Shown: one piece after another, positions 28,132-54,182 of the stretch
Layout: each line of letters starts with the position of its first letter
How positions within the stretch are numbered: position 1 is the stretch's first letter
IMG/VR virus record: IMGVR_UViG_3300032116_000004
Span: 62,001 to 126,000 of that record
Direction: 5' to 3' (one strand)
DNA: 64,000 bases
Position numbers and translations under genes: made by a program
The notes under the pieces: model-generated
What the model was told of the DNA's origin: nothing
The model's input: only the letters and a program-made list of their open reading frames with translations
Database searches by the model: none

Positions 28132-28361
28132 TTGGCAGCAGGTTTCTTGGCTCTCACTGCTTTGGCACGGACAGCAGGTTTCTTTTCCCCAGCAGGTTTT
28201 TTGGCAGCCGGTTTTTTCTTAGGCGCCGCAGCCTCGGAGTATTGTGTGGACATAGGTATCACACCAGGTGTGGTCTGTGGTGCTTCAACTTTGTAAGGGG
28301 CCTCTGGGCAAGGACTTACGGTGGGCTTGGAACCAAAAAACTTTTTTAAAAATGCGAGCAT
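28128..28361 (-). CDS. Small Lys/Ala/Pro-rich protein
   Basis: APYKVE plus KKPAA repeats; GGAG RBS; late motif upstream. Confidence 0.7.
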
Positions 28362-28419
28362 TGCAGTCTCCTTTGTTTTATATAGTGTATTTACACAGCA
28401 TATTATCGAAACCTAGCAT

Positions 28420-28443
28420 ATTGCACTGCAATGTAACTAAATA
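28420..28443 (+). promoter_or_regulatory. PhaR-box-like palindrome next to a late-type TAAATA upstream of aceA
   Basis: ATTGCA-C-TGCAAT at 28420-28432; TAAATA at 28438-28443. Confidence 0.55.
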
Positions 28444-28468
28444 TCCTGGCTCAACAGGAGGAAACACC

Positions 28469-29746
28469 ATGCAAGACCGTAGATGGAAGGTATACAAACT
28501 GCAACAAGAATGGACAGAAAACCCGCGCTGGACCGGAATCAAACGTGATTATTCAGCCGAGGACGTGGTGCGTTTGCAAGGTTCCAACCCCATAGAATAC
28601 AGTCTGGCACGGCGTGGCGCCGAAAAATTGTGGCGTTTGCTACATGAACAAGATTATGTCAACACCCTGGGAGCACTCACGGGCATGCAAGCCCTGCAAC
28701 AGGTCAAGGCCGGTTTGAAGGCTATATATTTGAGTGGGTGGCAAGTGGCCGCTGATGCCAACTTGGCTGGCGCCATGTATCCTGATCAGAGCCTGTATCC
28801 CGCAGACTCTGTGCCAGCAGTGGTGCGTAGGATCAACAATGCTTTTACCAGAGCAGATCAGATCGCCTGGATGGAAGACCAAGAAGATCGAGATTTTTTC
28901 GCACCCATCGTGGCTGACGCAGAGGCAGGATTTGGTGGTGTGCTCAATGCGTTCGAACTCATGAAGGCCATGATCGAAGCCGGGGCCGCAGGTGTGCATT
29001 TTGAAGATCAATTAGCGTCCGTAAAGAAATGCGGACACATGGGAGGAAAAGTCCTTGTTCCAACACGAGAAGCCATCAATAAACTTATTGCCGCTCGTCT
29101 CGCTTCTGATGTTATGGGAGTGCCTAGTCTTGTTATTGCTAGAACAGATGCCGAAGCCGGCGATCTTATCACTTCAGATATTGATCCTAACGACGTTCCT
29201 TTTCTTACTGGTGAAAGAACTGTGGAGGGTTTCTATCGGACCCGAGCAGGATTCGACCAAGCAGTCAGTAGAGCCCTGGCCTACTGTCCTTACGCAGATC
29301 TCGTATGGTGCGAAACAGGCAAACCCGACCTCGACTTCGCCAAGCGATTCGCCGAAGCCATACACCGACAGTTTCCGGGCAAGATGTTAGCCTACAACTG
29401 CTCACCATCATTCAACTGGAGGAAGAACCTAGATGCAGACACAATTGGCCGTTTCCAACGTGAACTTGGAGCAATGGGTTACCGTTTTCAATTCATCACA
29501 CTTGCTGGATTCCATGCTCTTAATCATGGCATGTTTGACCTTGCTCATGGCTATGCTAGGGACGGCATGTCTGCTTTCGTGGAGTTACAAGAGCGTGAGT
29601 TCGCGGATGCGAGCCGTGGTTTCGAAGCTGTCAAACATCAGAGAGAAGTAGGAACCAGTTACTTTGACCGCGTGACTACCACAGTGGAGGCTGATGCTTC
29701 CACCCAGGCTCTCAAAGGCTCAACAGAAGAAGAACAGTTCCACTGA
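28469..29746 (+). CDS. aceA: Isocitrate lyase
   Basis: [31 protein letters not shown] catalytic loop, [16 protein letters not shown]; AGGAGG RBS. Confidence 0.97.
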
Positions 29747-37102: not shown

Positions 37103-37693
37103 ATGCCCAATCTAGTGCCTATCGTGCTGGAACAGACTAGCCGTGGAGAACGCAGTTATGACATCTACAGCCGCCTGCTGAGAGATCGCATCATCATGCT
37201 GGATACAGACGTAAACTCACATTCAGCCAGCCTCATAGTGGCGCAGATGCTGTTCCTAGAAGCGGAAAATCCTGACAGAGACATCTTGTTCTATATCAAC
37301 TCACCAGGCGGGTCAATCACAGCGGGCATGAGCATCTATGATACCATGCAGTTCATCAAGTGTGATGTTTCTACCATAGTGTGTGGATTGGCCGCGTCGA
37401 TGGGCTCCATGCTGGCCTGCGCCGGCACTGCTGGCAAGCGGTTCATCCTGCCACACAGCCAGCACATGATCCATCAACCTCTGGGTGGAGCTGAAGGACA
37501 GGTCACTGAAGTGGAGATCCGTTACAAAGAACTCATGCGCTGGAAGAAGACCTTGACTGAACTCTATGTCCAGCACACCGGCAAAGACTATGCGACTCTG
37601 GAGAAAGATATGGATCGAGACAACTGGATGACAGCACAACAGGCCGTGGAGTATGGCCTAGCTGATCGCATCATCACCCAACGAGATGTCTAA
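37103..37693 (+). CDS. clpP: ClpP protease proteolytic subunit
   Basis: [46 protein letters not shown]. Confidence 0.97.
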
Positions 37694-39008
37694 TCAAAGA
37701 ATATTCTGCAACAGCCCGTGGTATGAATTACATATCTACTGGGACGGCGCTTTGGCGTTTTGCTGTCATGCCACTCCCAATGTTCCCTATGATACATCGC
37801 TGAAACAGCGATACAACATCAGGAACATGTCCATAAAGGAGTGGTATGATTCTGTGCCCATGCGTGAAGCTAGATTACAAGTGCTAGGGGATCAGCAATG
37901 GAATCATTGTGCTAGATGCTGGCACGAAGAACAGGTCAGTGACACCAGTCGTCGGCATCGTAGCAATCAGAAATCAGTGATATTCACCAAGCAGAATTTT
38001 GCAGAAAGTTACCAGCAAAGTCCTGGGTTCGAAAAATTTGAACACAGTCGATCCAACGCAGGTGCATATGATGGCATGCCAATCGATCTGCACATTGATC
38101 TTGGCAACTACTGCAATCTCGCCTGCAAGATGTGTAACCCGTCAGCATCCAGCCGCATCGCCAGCCAACATCGTCAATGGAACATGATCAGTGCTGTATC
38201 ACAGGATTGGACCGCTGATCCAGAAGTATGGAATAGATTCCGCGAGGAGTTAGTATCAATATCCAAACTCAAGAACATACATTTCATGGGCGGGGAGACC
38301 ATAATACAACCTCGGTTCCATGATCTAGTGGATTTCCTGATCGATCATGGTCGCACAGATGTGTGCATGAGTTTCGTGACCAATGGCACTTCCTTTGACA
38401 AAAAGATCATCGAAAAACTCAAACGGTTCCCCAGGGTGGGTCTTGAGATCAGCATAGAAACTCTGGACACGCTCAATGAATACACTCGCCAGGGCACAGA
38501 TAATAGCATGGTGCTGGCCAACATCGAGAATTACATCAATGAGTGCAATGGCACCACGATCACAGTGACCTTGAGACCAGCACCGGGATTGCTGACAGTG
38601 CGCAGTTATTGGCAAGTCATTGAGTTGGCTTTGCAAAAGGGGTTGTTGATCAAAAGCAATCTCTGCACAGATCCAGATTTCCTTGATATCACTGTGGTAC
38701 CCAAAAACATAAGAGATCAGTATCGACTGCCATATCTTGATTTGTTGACAAGATATGCACTGGATGAAGCCGATGTGTGGTCTGACTATAACGAAAGTGA
38801 CCCCAACAACTTCCGCAGGGTGGCCAAAAATCAGATATTACAAATACTGCGGATATTGGATCTACCAGAACCTGATGATCGAGATCGTCGTTGGTCAGCA
38901 TTGGTACAGCATCTCGATCGCTGGGATCGTGTGTTTGGATTTGACGCTCGTGTGTTGTATCCAGAATTTGCCCACATACTTGACAAGCATGGCTACCTAC
39001 AGAACTAA
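37686..39008 (+). CDS. Radical SAM protein with N-terminal SPASM/Twitch-like Cys cluster
   Basis: [14 protein letters not shown]; N-terminal C..PW...CC...CxxC. Confidence 0.88.
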
Positions 39009-39730: not shown

Positions 39731-39795
39731 AGGTTAGTGCGCACTAACCCAGTGTTTTTGCCCAGGTTGACCAGAAATCGCCATTTTGCTATAAT
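39731..39795 (+). promoter_or_regulatory. Palindrome plus early promoter cassette, copy 2
   Basis: Perfect GGTTAGTGCGCACTAACC (39732-39749); TTGACC-17-TATAAT. Confidence 0.88.
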
Positions 39796-40329: not shown

Positions 40330-40605
40330 ATGCCCACAATCAGCGAAGTCAATCACGAAATCATGCACGGCGATTTCACCAATGATCAACTCAATGCCAT
40401 CGCCCTGGCCATCAAGTATCGCCGGCGCCAGATTGGACAAGAAGTAAAAGTCACCATCCGTGTGGGCACTCCGGTGAAGTTCTATCATCCCAAACTGGGC
40501 CAGGACATCTTTGGCACCGTGGACCGTGTGAAGCAGAAATTTATCCTGGTGCAGACACTGGGTGGTCGCTACAATGTTCCGGCCAACCTTTTGGAACGAG
40601 TATGA
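40330..40605 (+). CDS. Small early protein, SH3-like C-terminus
   Basis: AAGGAG RBS; G..VKF...GTV..VK.K...V......V...LL. Confidence 0.7.
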   Translation: MPTISEVNHEIMHGDFTNDQLNAIALAIKYRRRQIGQEVKVTIRVGTPVKFYHPKLGQDIFGTVDRVKQKFILVQTLGGRYNVPANLLERV

Positions 40606-41057
40606 AACAGCAGATCCGATACGATCATACCTTTGAGTTTGACCTCACGGGCCGGGTGCAGTTTGGTGATCTGCCCATAGATACCGTGCATGACTTGTTC
40701 CAGGATGGTCGTGTGGCCAGCAAGTTCCTGGAGAACATCTTGCCAGTATGGTTCGAAGATCTAGAATACGTGGATCAAGACGGCTATGATCATGTGCAGA
40801 CATCCACTGGTCGCAGGCTGGACCTCAAAGGCTTCACCCGCGGTGGTGCCAGTTATGCTCCCAGCAACATGCTGGGTGCCGGGCGCAAGATCGATAGAGA
40901 GAAATTGCATGAGCATGCTCTCACCATCGACTACATACTGAGTGATATCACAGAATTCCCCCGGGTGCGCATCGTGTTCAAACGTGGAACCGAATTGGTA
41001 GAAAACTATCCTGCGGGCAAGATACCCACACAAGAACGAGAACGACTGTTTGGATAA
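40602..41057 (+). CDS. Putative PD-(D/E)xK type II restriction endonuclease (PvuII-like)
   Basis: DLFQD..., GYD-x10-DLK, C-terminal KIP; directly upstream of an MTase. Confidence 0.5.
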   Translation: MKQQIRYDHTFEFDLTGRVQFGDLPIDTVHDLFQDGRVASKFLENILPVWFEDLEYVDQDGYDHVQTSTGRRLDLKGFTRGGASYAPSNMLGAGRKIDREKLHEHALTIDYILSDITEFPRVRIVFKRGTELVENYPAGKIPTQERERLFG

Positions 41058-41844
41058 AAATAACATCATATTGCAGGACTGCGTTACAGGCATGCAGGCC
41101 TTGCCCGAAGCCAGTGTCGATATCTGCGTGACTTCTCCGCCCTACAACCTGGGCATTGGTTACAGCACCTATCGCGACGACCGGCCACGGCAGGACTATC
41201 TCCGATGGCTGGGGTCGGTGTTCGGCGAGATCAAAAGAGTGCTGACCGATGACGGACACTTCTGGCTCAACGTAGGTTACAGCAATCAAGATCCCTGGGT
41301 GGCACAAGACGTGGCGCAGGTGGCTCGTGATCATTTCGTGCTCCAGAATTCCGTGATGTGGGTCAAATCGATCTATGTCAACGGAAAGACATCGGGACAC
41401 TTCAAACCAGTGAACTCCGAACGTTACATCGCTCCCACATGGGAGCATGTGTTCCATTTCACCAAGGCAGGTCGGAGCCCATTGGACAAACTCACCATTG
41501 GTGTGCCCTACGAATACTATGCGGAGAATCTACGCAATCCCAAGACTGCCGGAACCAAACCCAATCTACGCTGTCGTGGCAACACCTGGTTCATACCCTA
41601 TGAGACCATCAGCAACCGGGCCAAGCATCGAGGCGATCATCCGGCCACTTTTCCTGTGGCCTTGGCCGAAAATTGCATCCGTGTGTCAGGCATCACATCA
41701 GGCACTGTGCTGGACCCATTCATGGGATCAGGCACTACTGCCATCGCGGCCCATCGCTGTGGTCTGTCATGGATGGGCTTTGAAATTGATGCAAACTACA
41801 GGGACTTTGCCCTGGATCGCATAGCCGCAGAAACCGCTGGTTGA
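41050..41844 (+). CDS. Beta-class DNA methyltransferase (N4-C/N6-A)
   Basis: TSPPY, HPATFP, VLDPFMGSGTT. Confidence 0.93.
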   Translation: MDKNNIILQDCVTGMQALPEASVDICVTSPPYNLGIGYSTYRDDRPRQDYLRWLGSVFGEIKRVLTDDGHFWLNVGYSNQDPWVAQDVAQVARDHFVLQNSVMWVKSIYVNGKTSGHFKPVNSERYIAPTWEHVFHFTKAGRSPLDKLTIGVPYEYYAENLRNPKTAGTKPNLRCRGNTWFIPYETISNRAKHRGDHPATFPVALAENCIRVSGITSGTVLDPFMGSGTTAIAAHRCGLSWMGFEIDANYRDFALDRIAAETAG

Positions 41845-41870
41845 CCAGAAATAGTGATTTCGGTTATAAT
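41841..41870 (+). promoter_or_regulatory. Early promoter (no palindrome)
   Basis: TTGACC-18-TATAAT. Confidence 0.75.
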
Positions 41871-41876
41871 ATGGGT

Positions 41877-42107
41877 ATGCTAAGAAATGACCGAATCACC
41901 TGGGGCCTCAAATGGGCCGGAACTATCGTAACCCTGGCTGGAGCACTCTGCACCAGCCTCCGCATTGATCCTTTGAACGTATATCTGCTGAATCTAGGCA
42001 GTTTGGTTTTTGTGCTATGGGCCGTGCGTATCCGCGACCGTGCCATGATCACTGTGAACGTGGGCTTATTGTCCATATACCTTGTAGGGTTATTTTTCAC
42101 TAGGTAA
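41877..42107 (+). CDS. Three-TM small membrane protein (possibly leaderless)
   Basis: Hydrophobic; ATG begins 7 nt after the -10 hexamer. Confidence 0.7.
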   Translation: MLRNDRITWGLKWAGTIVTLAGALCTSLRIDPLNVYLLNLGSLVFVLWAVRIRDRAMITVNVGLLSIYLVGLFFTR

Positions 42108-42185: not shown

Positions 42186-42464
42186 ATGTCATATTACATC
42201 ATAGTCAAAGCCACAGGACTCATCGTTTCGGATGGCCCAAATCGCACTCGTGCCTATCGCACTCAAGGTGCCGCCAAGGCCACCATCACTAGATTGGTCA
42301 AGAAAGCCGGTTGGAAGGGCAACGAGTTTGAAATCACTCACACCCGCGATTACCAACCACGCATGGTCACTCGTCGGAATTTGATGTCAGGCCAGGAGTT
42401 CCAAGAAGATGTGAACACTCCTTACTTCTGCTCGCCTGCATCCGAATCCTACTGGAGCATGTGA
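42186..42464 (+). CDS. Conserved early phage protein
   Basis: NLMSG.EF.E..NTP..CSP.SE.YWSM motif. Confidence 0.8.
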   Translation: MSYYIIVKATGLIVSDGPNRTRAYRTQGAAKATITRLVKKAGWKGNEFEITHTRDYQPRMVTRRNLMSGQEFQEDVNTPYFCSPASESYWSM

Positions 42465-42862
42465 TCGTGGCGCTGAAGATCATGCGCGAAGTCACTGAAT
42501 GGAAGGGCGTGGAATATCGCCTGCCCAACCATGTGTATCTCATGGATGGCGACAAGGTCTATGCCTACTCCAAATGGGGTCAAAGCGAGCCCCAATACAT
42601 GAAGACCTTTCTCCGCATGGATCGCAGGGGCAGAAAGTTTGAAGAAGTCAAAAAGAACACCTGGAAGTTCGATCTATCAATACAGACCGAAGCCCCTGCC
42701 AAAGAGCCAGAACCTCAAGGTGAGATCTGGACTGTGCAAGGGAGCAAAGGCAACCAATATTTTGTCAATCTTTCGGCCGGACACTGGTCATGCACCTGTC
42801 CCGGATTTGGATTCCGACGCCATTGTCGGCATGTGGACGAACTGCAAACTGCCCAAAAATAA
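42461..42862 (+). CDS. SWIM zinc-finger protein
   Basis: VQGSKG..Y.V, CTCPGF.FRRHCRH. Confidence 0.82.
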   Translation: MIVALKIMREVTEWKGVEYRLPNHVYLMDGDKVYAYSKWGQSEPQYMKTFLRMDRRGRKFEEVKKNTWKFDLSIQTEAPAKEPEPQGEIWTVQGSKGNQYFVNLSAGHWSCTCPGFGFRRHCRHVDELQTAQK

Positions 42863-53121: not shown

Positions 53122-53467
53122 CGCACATAATTTTTACCTTTGGCGCCATCGTTATGTGGACGATGATACCGAAGCAGTGATCACACGCACCTGTTTTGGT
53201 ATCACTGGCAATCTCGATTCCAGGCAAAATGGCTATGAAGGTCATGTGGGACACGCAGTGCGCTGGGCGGCCACTTGGTCTGGGCCCGAACGCCCTATCC
53301 GAGAACTGGAACATCGTCTCAAGGCAGCCTTCCGTGATTATCTCGTCAGCGGACACAATGACTATGTATATGAGTGGGTGGACGAAACCATACCATTCGA
53401 AACCATCCGCAACTGGGTGGAGTGGGAAGTAGAAAACACATTTTCTGATATCCGCCGTGACACATAG
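53099..53467 (+). CDS. GIY-YIG/T5orf172-like small protein
   Basis: FYLW...FGIT....R...Y...ELE..LK...EW. Confidence 0.5.
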   Translation: MTNTSLSDAHNFYLWRHRYVDDDTEAVITRTCFGITGNLDSRQNGYEGHVGHAVRWAATWSGPERPIRELEHRLKAAFRDYLVSGHNDYVYEWVDETIPFETIRNWVEWEVENTFSDIRRDT

Positions 53468-54182
53468 CATCTACCAGCAGGACTGTGTAGTGGGCATGCA
53501 GGAACACGTGGCCGATGGCACAGTAGATCTCATATTCACTGATCCGCCCTATGGCATAGCCGGTGATCAACTAGACACGCACTACAATCGAGACGACAGC
53601 AAGGTCATCGCCGGTTATGTGGATGTGCCCAGAGATCAATATGCCCAATGGTGTCATGCCTGGATCCAGGAATGTGAGCGAGTGTTGCGGCCCGGTGGAT
53701 CCTTGTATATCGTGTCTGGCTATTCAAATCTACATCATATTCTCAACGCCTTGCACTACACACAACTCGAAGAAATCAATCATATCATCGCCCAATACAC
53801 CTTTGGAGTATACACCAAAAAGAAATGGGTCTCGAGCCATTACCATGTGCTGTTCTGGTCCAAGCGAGAACGAGGCCAACAGAAGAGGATCTTCAACACA
53901 CATTGTCGTTTTGCTGATACCACAGAATCATACAACGACCGACTCAGTGTGCAGACCTTGCCTAGAGAATACAAGACGGGCGAGATCCGCAACAACAATC
54001 AGTTGGCCGAATCGTTCATTGAAAAGTTCATCGATTACAGTTCCAATCTAGGAGACTTGGTGCTGGATCCCTTTGGAGGATCGTTCTCCACGGGCCGTGC
54101 CGCTCTCCGGTTGGGACGTAGATTCGTTGGATTCGAACTCAACCCACACGCATACCAACATTTTGGGCAGACCCTAGGTTAG
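53457..54182 (+). CDS. Beta-class DNA adenine methyltransferase
   Basis: TDPPY, VLDPFGGSFST, GFELN. Confidence 0.9.
   Translation: MTHSIYQQDCVVGMQEHVADGTVDLIFTDPPYGIAGDQLDTHYNRDDSKVIAGYVDVPRDQYAQWCHAWIQECERVLRPGGSLYIVSGYSNLHHILNALHYTQLEEINHIIAQYTFGVYTKKKWVSSHYHVLFWSKRERGQQKRIFNTHCRFADTTESYNDRLSVQTLPREYKTGEIRNNNQLAESFIEKFIDYSSNLGDLVLDPFGGSFSTGRAALRLGRRFVGFELNPHAYQHFGQTLG

What the first reader, a model, noticed from the sequence alone, without database searches (positions are those of the whole stretch)
40602..41844. Phage-borne type II restriction-modification pair with a PvuII-like nuclease
Seen: a 151-aa ORF overlaps a beta-class TSPPY methyltransferase in an early operon. The ORF contains DLFQD, GYD-x10-DLK and a terminal KIP. 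Known (from memory of R.PvuII, about 157 aa): DIFQD, GND-x9-ELK and PKIP, with a cognate beta-class N4-C methyltransferase. Inference: an intact R-M system used against host or competing phage DNA. The recognition site is unknown. CAGCTG does occur in the window (1349, 57292).
Basis: partly seen in the sequence, partly recalled or inferred. Interest (0 to 1): 0.62.

Follow-up and report, generated by a model that had tools for sequence, protein, structure and literature searches.

The report
Phage RsaI-like restriction-modification gene pair
A 316-kb freshwater T4-like phage carries an intact two-gene restriction-modification cassette, a small RsaI-family nuclease with a PvuII-like fold plus an N4-cytosine-type methyltransferase; the same pair is already annotated in a few marine cyanophages, so it is a solid but fairly ordinary find.

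Summary
A 151-aa ORF (40602-41057, +) overlaps by 8 nt a 264-aa beta-class TSPPY DNA methyltransferase (41050-41844).

The nearest named relatives are cyanophage genes annotated "R.RsaI endonuclease" (Syn19 43% identity). Each is followed by a methyltransferase 56% identical to this one.

Across relatives the nuclease sits beside four unrelated methyltransferase families, or is fused to one in both orders. That strongly supports a restriction-modification role.

The likely site is GTAC, not CAGCTG. Published work shows M.RsaI makes GTA(m4C). GTAC is also the most avoided 4-mer in this genome (72 seen, 711 expected). A control cyanophage lacking the gene avoids GTAC too, so the site stays inferred.

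Verdict: a new member of a known kind. The closest named family is RsaI, not PvuII.

The parts
40602..41057 (+). Restriction endonuclease gene, 151 aa. RsaI-family, PD-(D/E)XK fold, predicted homodimer.
   Evidence: ORF. 172 homologues and 622 clusters. AF2 pLDDT 95.1, pTM 0.89. Foldseek top hits are PvuII at prob 0.99. The unbiased fold search gives only PD-(D/E)XK nucleases at the top. PADLOC REase_II PDLC03550 at E 3.6e-8. 43% identity to Syn19 'R.RsaI endonuclease'. Dimer ipSAE 0.78 against 0.01 for the best control.
40788..40829 (+). Codons for the catalytic motif D63 ... D74-L-K76.
   Evidence: D63 and K76 are invariant or near-invariant. Position 74 is D or E in all members read. They fall on model strands 62-66 and 72-79, the canonical beta2 and beta3 positions.
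41050..41844 (+). Cognate DNA methyltransferase gene, 264 aa. Beta-class, probably N4-cytosine. TTG start overlaps the nuclease stop by 8 nt.
   Evidence: PF01555 at E 2.5e-46. phrog_67 at 3e-57. PADLOC MTase_II PDLC03295 at 2e-83 over full length. Closest solved chains are N4-cytosine methyltransferases 8s9m/8s9n at 1e-21. 56% identity to the methyltransferases downstream of R.RsaI-like genes in Syn19 and ACG-2014j.
41134..41145 (+). Codons for SPPY (motif IV, catalytic) of the methyltransferase.
   Evidence: Translation. The motif is kept in all beta-class partners of the family.
41713..41733 (+). Codons for DPFMGSG (motif I, AdoMet binding) of the methyltransferase.
   Evidence: Motif I lies after motif IV, the beta-class order.
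39767..39795 (+). Consensus sigma-70-type promoter-like site (TTGACC-17-TATAAT) upstream of the gene string that includes the pair.
   Evidence: One of 26 such sites, all on the + strand, against 0.25 expected. Its function is inferred.
40330..40605 (+). Upstream 91-aa ORF whose stop overlaps the nuclease ATG (ATGA). It is context, not part of the mobile pair.
   Evidence: It is found only in the same phage (L009, L010), not beside other homologues. It has no Pfam, PHROG or PADLOC hit, so it is not a recognisable controller protein.
41841..41870 (+). Next consensus promoter-like site, at the methyltransferase stop. It marks the downstream limit of the pair.

Best explanation
This is a Type IIP restriction-modification cassette carried in the early region of a freshwater T4-like jumbo phage.

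Shown or strongly supported: gene 1 encodes a small PD-(D/E)XK endonuclease of the RsaI family. Its model has a PvuII/NhoI-like architecture with catalytic D63, D74 and K76. It is predicted to form a homodimer through its N-terminal strand and helices (residues 15-49).

Inferred: as a homodimer it would cut a short palindrome, most probably GTAC, giving blunt ends as RsaI does. Gene 2 is translationally coupled to gene 1 and encodes a beta-class SPPY methyltransferase. It most probably makes GTA(m4C), as M.RsaI does, and so protects phage DNA. Virion DNA would enter a cell already methylated. The nuclease, made early, would cut any unmethylated GTAC DNA in the cell, whether host chromosome or co-infecting phage. 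The methyltransferase would then keep newly replicated phage DNA protected. The phage has purged about 90% of its own GTAC sites, which lowers both its exposure to host GTAC restriction and the risk of cutting itself.

For: Sequence-level match to a curated Type II restriction enzyme model: PDLC03550 at 3.6e-8. The Syn19 protein hits the same model at 1.6e-11.

Named relatives: Syn19_153 and ACG-2014j gp047 are annotated 'R.RsaI endonuclease'. Both show the same R-then-M overlapping order, and their methyltransferases are 56% identical to this one.

Functional linkage: in 20 of 27 distinct contexts the homologue is next to, or fused with, a DNA methyltransferase. Four unrelated families are involved:
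- PF01555 with SPPY
- phrog_5172 with NPPF (PADLOC MTase_II 1e-47)
- phrog_799 with NPPW
- Dam-like PF02086
Fusions occur in both orders: P0219, P0258 and P0272 as R-M, and P0235 as M-R. Flanking genes are not conserved with the pair, as expected of a mobile two-gene module.

Dimer: ipSAE 0.78 in three runs against 0.01 for the best of three controls. The mark was reached by 20 of 30 proteins solved as pairs of one chain and 1 of 23 solved as single chains. The runs agree in at least 96% of contacts and partner pLDDT is at least 88.

Site: M.RsaI makes GTA(m4C) (PMC3287169, PMC6256690), and GTm6AC also blocks RsaI (PMC4357717). That fits both the m4C-type and the adenine-type partners. GTAC is the most under-represented of all 256 tetramers in the genome (72 against 711, z -31). 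It is depleted in all three codon phases. It has the lowest pooled O/E in two of three groups of homologue-bearing loci.
Against: No biochemical data exist. I could not fetch the sequence of R.RsaI itself, so the RsaI link rests on depositors' annotation plus an unnamed PADLOC REase_II model.

GTAC avoidance is not specific to carriers. Syn9, which has no homologue, shows 30 against 141. In Syn19 and ACG-2014j, AGCT and TGCA are avoided more than GTAC. AGCT is also strongly avoided in this genome (271 against 747).

Seven of 27 contexts show no methyltransferase within 3 kb. Two of these records hold a PF01555 methyltransferase 3.7 kb and about 21 kb away, and the others are fragments 4-14% complete.

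The methyltransferase orthologue also occurs without the nuclease, in ACG-2014f, inside a methyltransferase cluster.

Confidence: 0.75

Rival explanations
1. It is a true restriction-modification pair, but the recognition site is not GTAC. AGCT or another short palindrome containing both A and C would be candidates.
For: AGCT is the second most avoided tetramer here (271 against 747). It is avoided more than GTAC in the carriers Syn19 and ACG-2014j. Specificity can shift within restriction enzyme families. At 34-43% identity to the 'R.RsaI' cyanophage genes, identical specificity is not guaranteed.
Against: GTAC avoidance is far stronger in this genome (O/E 0.10 against 0.36). GTAC has the lowest pooled O/E in two of three groups of homologue-bearing loci, while AGCT does not stay low (0.74 in one group). 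The annotated relatives are named for RsaI. M.RsaI is an m4C enzyme, as this methyltransferase appears to be (PMC3287169).
Confidence: 0.15
2. The two genes are functionally independent. The methyltransferase would be an orphan anti-restriction enzyme protecting the phage from host enzymes. The small nuclease would have another job, such as homing-type endonuclease, junction resolvase or non-specific degradation of host DNA.
Against: Association with four unrelated methyltransferase families, plus fusions in both orders, is hard to explain without functional coupling. The genes overlap and are co-inherited at 34-73% (R) and 54-62% (M) identity. The nuclease matches a Type II restriction enzyme model. 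The genome has its own T4-type recombination genes.
Confidence: 0.07
3. It is a member of the PvuII family cutting CAGCTG or a close variant.
For: PvuII is Foldseek's best match. Size, motif spacing and an N-terminal dimer interface are similar. The partner is a beta-class SPPY methyltransferase, as is M.PvuII.
Against: No member of the family hits any Pfam model, PvuII's included. Single-sequence and profile searches of the PDB do not find PvuII even at E 10. M.PvuII is only a weak C-terminal hit for the methyltransferase (2.8e-9 against 1e-21 for other N4C enzymes). CAGCTG is not avoided beyond its AGCT core (27 against 32).
Confidence: 0.02
4. It is a modification-dependent nuclease like NhoI or Eco15I, cutting methylated DNA rather than unmethylated DNA.
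Against: The Z difference from PvuII and I-Ssp6803I is under 1, so they are tied. Regular pairing and fusion with methyltransferases would be self-destructive for a methyl-dependent enzyme. It matches a Type II restriction enzyme model.
Confidence: 0.01

Closest known systems
RsaI restriction-modification system (R.RsaI / M.RsaI, Rhodobacter blasticus 28/5; GT^AC, GTA(m4C)), with the 'R.RsaI endonuclease' plus methyltransferase pairs of cyanophages Syn19, Syn2 and ACG-2014j
   Same: A small nuclease of about 150-170 aa, 43% (Syn19) and 34% (ACG-2014j) identical. The same R-then-M overlapping order. Methyltransferases 56% identical. An m4C-type partner, as published for M.RsaI (PMC3287169, PMC6256690). 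The RsaI family was predicted to be PD-(D/E)XK (PMC2441816, lowest reliability class), which the model here bears out.
   Different: The host is a 316-kb freshwater T4-like phage, not a marine cyanophage or a bacterium. The bacterial R.RsaI sequence was not compared directly. Specificity is untested. GTAC purging is far more extreme here (O/E 0.10) than in Syn19 (0.51) or ACG-2014j (0.37).
PvuII endonuclease (PDB 1PVI, 1PVU, 1F0O; Pfam Endonuc-PvuII) with M.PvuII
   Same: Best Foldseek match (prob 0.99, TM 0.45-0.50). Similar size. D...(D/E)xK on beta2/beta3. N-terminal dimerisation region. Beta-class SPPY N4C-type partner.
NhoI / Eco15I N-terminal domain (PDB 8Q5N, 8RPX, 8Q5O), methyl-directed PD-(D/E)XK nucleases
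   Different: Those enzymes need methylated targets. This family is paired or fused with methyltransferases, which implies it is blocked by methylation.
Virus-borne GTAC systems: chlorella virus R.CviQI / M.CviQI (GT(m6A)C)
   Same: A virus carrying its own Type II system for GTAC. An adenine methyltransferase protects the same site (PMC3287169, PMC4357717), as the adenine-type partners of this family may do.
   Different: A eukaryotic algal virus. No sequence comparison was made here, and homology is unknown.

Membership tests
PD-(D/E)XK nuclease superfamily | Core alpha-beta-beta-beta-alpha-beta fold | tested here: met
   AF2 model pLDDT 95.1 with H36-50, E54-59, E62-66, E72-79, H99-106, E110-118. 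In the search of 48,161 chains the first 13 matches are all PD-(D/E)XK nucleases, and most lower ones are too.
PD-(D/E)XK nuclease superfamily | Acidic residue at the start of beta2 and (D/E)xK on beta3 | tested here: met
   D63 and D74-L-K76. D63 and K76 are invariant or at least 90% conserved, and position 74 is D or E, across 35-63 diverse members.
PD-(D/E)XK nuclease superfamily | Divalent-metal-dependent phosphodiester hydrolysis | not testable with these tools
   Needs an enzyme assay.
Type II restriction-modification system | Separate nuclease and DNA methyltransferase genes side by side | tested here: met
   8-nt overlap, same strand. The methyltransferase matches PF01555 at 2.5e-46 and PADLOC MTase_II at 2e-83. 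The nuclease matches PADLOC REase_II at 3.6e-8.
Type II restriction-modification system | Nuclease-methyltransferase association conserved across unrelated genomes | tested here: met
   20 of 27 contexts, four methyltransferase families, and fusions in both orders.
Type II restriction-modification system | Site-specific cleavage blocked by the cognate methylation | not testable with these tools
   Only indirect evidence: GTAC at 72 against 711 expected, confounded by avoidance in phages without the gene.
Type II restriction-modification system | Homodimer acting on a palindrome (subtype P) | tested here: inconclusive
   Predicted dimer ipSAE 0.78 against 0.01 for the best control. The mark was reached by 20 of 30 proteins solved as pairs of one chain and 1 of 23 solved as single chains. 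The runs agree in at least 96% of contacts and partner pLDDT is at least 88. This is a prediction, not a measurement.
RsaI family of restriction endonucleases (REBASE; Orlowski and Bujnicki 2008) | Significant sequence similarity to R.RsaI or its annotated homologues | tested here: inconclusive
   43% identity (E 1e-32) to Syn19_153 and 34% (E 3e-10) to ACG-2014j gp047, both deposited as 'R.RsaI endonuclease'. R.RsaI of R. blasticus 28/5 itself could not be fetched.
RsaI family of restriction endonucleases (REBASE; Orlowski and Bujnicki 2008) | Cognate methyltransferase makes m4C at GTAC | tested here: inconclusive
   SPPY motif, and the nearest solved relatives are N4-cytosine methyltransferases. 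The target base and site were not measured.
RsaI family of restriction endonucleases (REBASE; Orlowski and Bujnicki 2008) | Recognition of GTAC with a blunt cut | not testable with these tools
   Needs a digestion assay.
PvuII family (Pfam Endonuc-PvuII) | Match to the family's sequence profile | tested here: not met
   No Pfam family for the window protein at E<=1. None of 35 members hit Endonuc-PvuII at E<=10; only scattered single hits to unrelated families appeared. PvuII chains are absent from phmmer and profile searches of the PDB at E<=10.
PvuII family (Pfam Endonuc-PvuII) | PvuII-like three-dimensional architecture | tested here: met
PvuII family (Pfam Endonuc-PvuII) | CAGCTG specificity | tested here: inconclusive
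   CAGCTG is 27 against 32 expected given its AGCT core, so there is no selective avoidance. Not assayed.

The most novel reading that the evidence does not exclude
The RsaI-like nuclease family may be mainly a weapon of aquatic T4-like phages rather than a bacterial defence. It would be used offensively, early in infection, against host or rival-phage DNA. Self-protection would come from interchangeable methyltransferases (four families, plus fusions) combined with near-total purging of the target site from the phage's own genome. In this phage only 72 GTAC sites remain, and 66 of them lie in a GGTAC context. That bias would point to a second, still unidentified layer of protection or a flank preference of the enzyme.
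Probability: 0.25. Interest if true: 0.6.

Novelty: new member of a known kind. Interest (0 to 1): 0.32.

Why it matters
Complete restriction-modification systems on lytic phages are uncommon, and their role is poorly tested. They might degrade the host genome, exclude rival phages, or simply behave as selfish modules.

This case adds four things:
- A confident structural model for the RsaI family, which has no solved structure and no Pfam model.
- Evidence that the family is large (622 clusters) and, in the contexts sampled, phage-borne.
- Comparative evidence for its restriction-modification role: four methyltransferase partner families and fusions in both orders.
- A phage genome with extreme GTAC purging, which could serve as a test bed.

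The system itself is of a known kind, and the same pair has been annotated in cyanophage Syn19. The gain is incremental.

Tried and rejected
Searches that found nothing:
- blastn of the 3.1-kb region against 50,697 phage records: no match.
- tblastn of the nuclease against 72,556 plasmids: no match.
- Scan of GTDB genome contigs with the family alignment A1: six pattern matches, none confirmed.
Relatives cannot be drawn for a virus record. So I could neither reach bacterial members nor compare with R.RsaI itself.
- Pfam, PHROG and NCBIfam gave nothing for the nuclease.
- PDB sequence searches gave only chance hits, to F5/8 type C domain and Fyn SH3 chains at E>0.01.
- Cluster look-ups gave only 'hypothetical protein' names.
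- The supplement of Orlowski and Bujnicki 2008 is not held.
- No RNA run holds the locus. Read laying was not used, since contigs cannot show expression or methylation.

Ideas rejected:
- A controller (C) protein upstream. The 91-aa ORF at 40330-40605 overlaps the nuclease start but is not conserved with the pair and has no helix-turn-helix hit.
- A methyltransferase-free nuclease plus SAM-lyase strategy in L024/L025. A PF01555 methyltransferase lies about 21 kb away in the same record.
- The ACG-2014f gene next to the methyltransferase orthologue as a hidden nuclease homologue. It is methyltransferase-like (hhalign probability 0.1%).

Full report
**What is there.** The window holds ORF 40602-41057 (+, 151 aa) and ORF 41050-41844 (+, 264 aa, TTG start). 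The nuclease stop (TAA, 41055-41057) lies inside the first codons of the second gene, an 8-nt overlap. The nuclease ATG in turn overlaps the stop of an upstream 91-aa ORF as ATGA. That protein is a DNA methyltransferase. It matches PF01555 at E 2.5e-46, phrog_67 at 3e-57 and PADLOC MTase_II PDLC03295 at 2e-83 over its full length. SPPY comes before DPFMGSG, the beta-class order.

**The genome.** The window is bases 62001-126000 of a single 315,778-bp virus record, 91% complete by CheckV. tblastn with core proteins of cyanophage ACG-2014j finds T4-type terminase, sheath, portal, prohead protease, major capsid protein, DNA polymerase, primase-helicase, clamp loader, gp46/47, gp55, UvsW and UvsX at 25-38% identity. 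It is therefore a T4-like jumbo myovirus. Near-identical DNA occurs in lake and freshwater metagenomes from 17 studies, and no RNA run holds it. The genome carries 26 TTGACN-N16-18-TATAAT sites, all on the + strand, against 0.25 expected. Nine of them lie in the 20-kb bin that holds the pair, and they flank the pair at 39767 and 41841. That fits an early region, but expression timing is inferred.

**The nuclease family.** Pfam, PHROGs and NCBIfam have no model for it, and none of 35 diverse members hits the PvuII family in Pfam. The word search finds 172 homologues at 55-99% identity. The exhaustive profile search finds 622 clusters at E<=1e-3 and 275 at E<=1e-10. Across 63 diverse members the near-invariant residues are D35-G36-R37, D63, K76, T79, G82, S88, G92, R95, P120, G129 and F150. 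Position 74 is D or E in every sequence read. PADLOC's curated model REase_II PDLC03550 matches the window protein at 3.6e-8, the Syn19 homologue at 1.6e-11 and the ACG-2014j homologue at 1.4e-3.

**Fold.** An AlphaFold2 model built on 55 sequences has mean pLDDT 95.1 and pTM 0.89. D63 opens strand 62-66, and D74-x-K76 lies on strand 72-79. These are the canonical PD-(D/E)XK positions.
- Foldseek against the PDB puts PvuII chains at ranks 1-7 (prob 0.97-1.00, E 1.5e-3 to 1e-2, TM 0.43-0.50, 12-18% identity).
- Neither phmmer nor a family profile finds PvuII in the PDB at E<=10.
- A two-copy prediction gives ipSAE 0.78 in three runs against 0.01 for the best of three controls. The mark was reached by 20 of 30 proteins solved as pairs of one chain and 1 of 23 solved as single chains. 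The runs agree in at least 96% of contacts, and partner pLDDT is at least 88. The symmetric interface uses residues 15-49. This supports, but does not show, a homodimer of the kind Type IIP enzymes form.

**Named relatives.** tblastn against 50,697 phage records finds only five records from three phages. They are Syn19 (two records) and Syn2 (43% identity over 96%, E 1e-32) and ACG-2014j (two records; 34%, E 3e-10). In Syn19 and ACG-2014j the gene is deposited as 'R.RsaI endonuclease' and is followed by an overlapping methyltransferase gene. Those methyltransferases are 56% identical to the window's. Orlowski and Bujnicki (PMC2441816) listed an RsaI family of 11 members as PD-(D/E)XK by sequence analysis, at their lowest reliability class. 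The model here agrees. I could not fetch R.RsaI itself, so this link rests on depositors' annotation.

**Is it a restriction-modification pair?** I read 27 distinct genomic contexts of homologues.
- Ten have a PF01555 SPPY methyltransferase adjacent. In one it lies upstream, and in one a single ORF intervenes.
- Two have an unrelated NPPF protein adjacent: P0121 in L001, and L032. It matches phrog_5172 and PADLOC MTase_II PDLC03255 at 1e-47.
- Four are fusions of the nuclease with that NPPF domain: P0219, P0258 and P0272 as nuclease-methyltransferase, and P0235 in the reverse order.
- Three have a small NPPW methyltransferase of phrog_799.
- One has a Dam-like PF02086 enzyme.
- Seven show no methyltransferase within 3 kb. 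In two of these records a PF01555 gene lies 3.7 kb and about 21 kb away. The others are fragments 4-14% complete.

Genes flanking the window's pair are not found beside other homologues. Repeated pairing with four unrelated methyltransferase families, plus fusions in both orders, is strong comparative evidence that methylation controls this nuclease.

**Which site?**
- Published SMRT data show that M.RsaI makes GTA(m4C) and M.CviQI makes GT(m6A)C (PMC3287169; PMC6256690). GTm6AC also blocks RsaI (PMC4357717; PMC2588503). GTAC holds one A and one C per strand, so both cytosine-type and adenine-type partners can protect it.
- The window's methyltransferase has SPPY, and its closest solved relatives are N4-cytosine enzymes (1e-21). 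M.PvuII is a weak partial hit (2.8e-9).
- In the 316-kb genome GTAC is the most under-represented of all 256 tetramers: 72 against 711 expected, z -31. In the window it is 16 against 135.
- The deficit is present in all three codon phases. GTA-CNN is 23 against 235, NGT-ACN is 36 against 338, and NNG-TAC is 13 against 280. Gly-Thr is written GGC-ACN 287 times but GGT-ACN only 26 times, although GGT and GGC are used equally overall. So selection acts on the DNA word.
- CAGCTG (27 against 32) is not avoided beyond its AGCT core.
- Pooled over homologue-bearing viral loci, GTAC has the lowest O/E in two of three groups, at 0.27 and 0.44.

The caveat matters. Syn9, which has no homologue, also avoids GTAC (30 against 141). 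In Syn19 and ACG-2014j, AGCT and TGCA are avoided more than GTAC. Avoidance may therefore reflect host enzymes. I put GTAC at roughly 0.6-0.65.

**Mechanism proposed.**
- Shown: an intact PD-(D/E)XK nuclease gene is translationally coupled to an intact beta-class methyltransferase gene. The pair is conserved and sits on a T4-like phage.
- Inferred: packaged phage DNA is already methylated at its few GTAC sites. The dimeric nuclease, made early, cuts unmethylated GTAC in the host chromosome or in co-infecting phages. The methyltransferase keeps replicating phage DNA protected. Purging of GTAC lowers the risk of self-cleavage and of host restriction.
- The methyltransferase orthologue also occurs alone, in a methyltransferase cluster of ACG-2014f. 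So protection from host GTAC enzymes is probably the older function, and the nuclease an added weapon or selfish partner.

**Comparison and novelty.** This is a member of the RsaI-like family already annotated in marine cyanophages. It works like a Type IIP enzyme and has a PvuII/NhoI-like architecture. It fails the sequence test for the PvuII family. New here are the freshwater jumbo-phage carrier, the confident structural model, the breadth of the family, the partner swapping and the extreme GTAC purging. I rate it a new member of a known kind, interest about 0.3.

**Open point.** Of the 72 remaining GTAC sites, 66 lie in GGTAC/GTACC context against 43% expected. This bias is absent from the four cyanophage pieces, and I have no tested explanation for it.

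Noticed in passing
whole genome G000; in the window GTAC at 2992, 9539, 11278, 13262, 13763, 16306, 17210, 18491, 19703, 20883, 22029, 30798, 31228, 38697, 38904, 52090: 66 of the 72 remaining GTAC sites are in GGTAC/GTACC context, against 43% expected. The bias is not seen in the Syn19, ACG-2014j, Syn9 or S-PM2 pieces. The reason is unknown.
   Followed up: partly
whole genome G000: Other strongly avoided words: AGCT 271 against 747, GCAGC/GCTGC 131 and 135 against 346 and 304, GTGCAC 16 against 73, AGCGCT 1 against 33, GCGCGC 0 against 11. This suggests pressure from several restriction systems.
   Followed up: no
window 53457-54182 (+): A second beta-class DNA methyltransferase, with DPPY (adenine type), and no nuclease gene recognised beside it. 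PF01555 at 2.6e-33; PADLOC MTase_II PDLC03296 at 5e-79.
   Followed up: partly
window 28268-29746 (+): An isocitrate lyase family ORF (PF00463, E 3.5e-107) in a phage genome. It may be an auxiliary metabolic gene.
   Followed up: no
window 37686-39008 (+): A radical SAM plus SPASM-domain protein of 440 aa, about 1.6 kb upstream of the pair.
   Followed up: no
window 4766, 39767, 41841, 42127, 43604, 47406, 50236, 54201, 54554, 57157, 59257, 63709 (+): Near-consensus sigma-70 promoters (TTGACN-N16-18-TATAAT). There are 26 in the genome, all on the + strand, against 0.25 expected. They cluster at window 38-58 kb.
   Followed up: partly
proteins P0219, P0258 (L031:4001-5314), P0272, P0235: Natural fusions of the RsaI-like nuclease with an NPPF methyltransferase domain, in both orders. 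None has a Pfam hit.
   Followed up: partly
L024:3454-3993 and L025: A nuclease homologue is followed by an S-adenosylmethionine lyase family gene (PF23780, 1.5e-15). There are 0 GTAC in 6.4 kb against 18 expected. A PF01555 methyltransferase lies about 21 kb away.
   Followed up: partly
L028:3001-3456: A nuclease homologue is inserted between the gp44 and gp62 clamp-loader genes of a T4-like phage, with no methyltransferase within 3 kb.
   Followed up: no
L012:1794-2318: Between the nuclease homologue and its SPPY methyltransferase lies a 174-aa ORF that matches a different Type II restriction enzyme model (PADLOC PDLC03511, 5e-13). That makes two nuclease genes for one methyltransferase.
   Followed up: no
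window 41841-42107 and 42461-42862 (+): Downstream neighbours are a DUF6552 small membrane-like protein (8e-9) and a protein with a weak SWIM zinc-finger hit (E 0.0018, just under Pfam's cut-off). Neither travels with the pair as a unit; only L017 holds weak homologues of both, in a different arrangement.
   Followed up: partly
window 40740-40767 (+): A weaker promoter-like site (TTGCCA-16-TAGAAT, 10 of 12) lies inside the nuclease gene. It could give methyltransferase-only transcripts. Untested.
   Followed up: no
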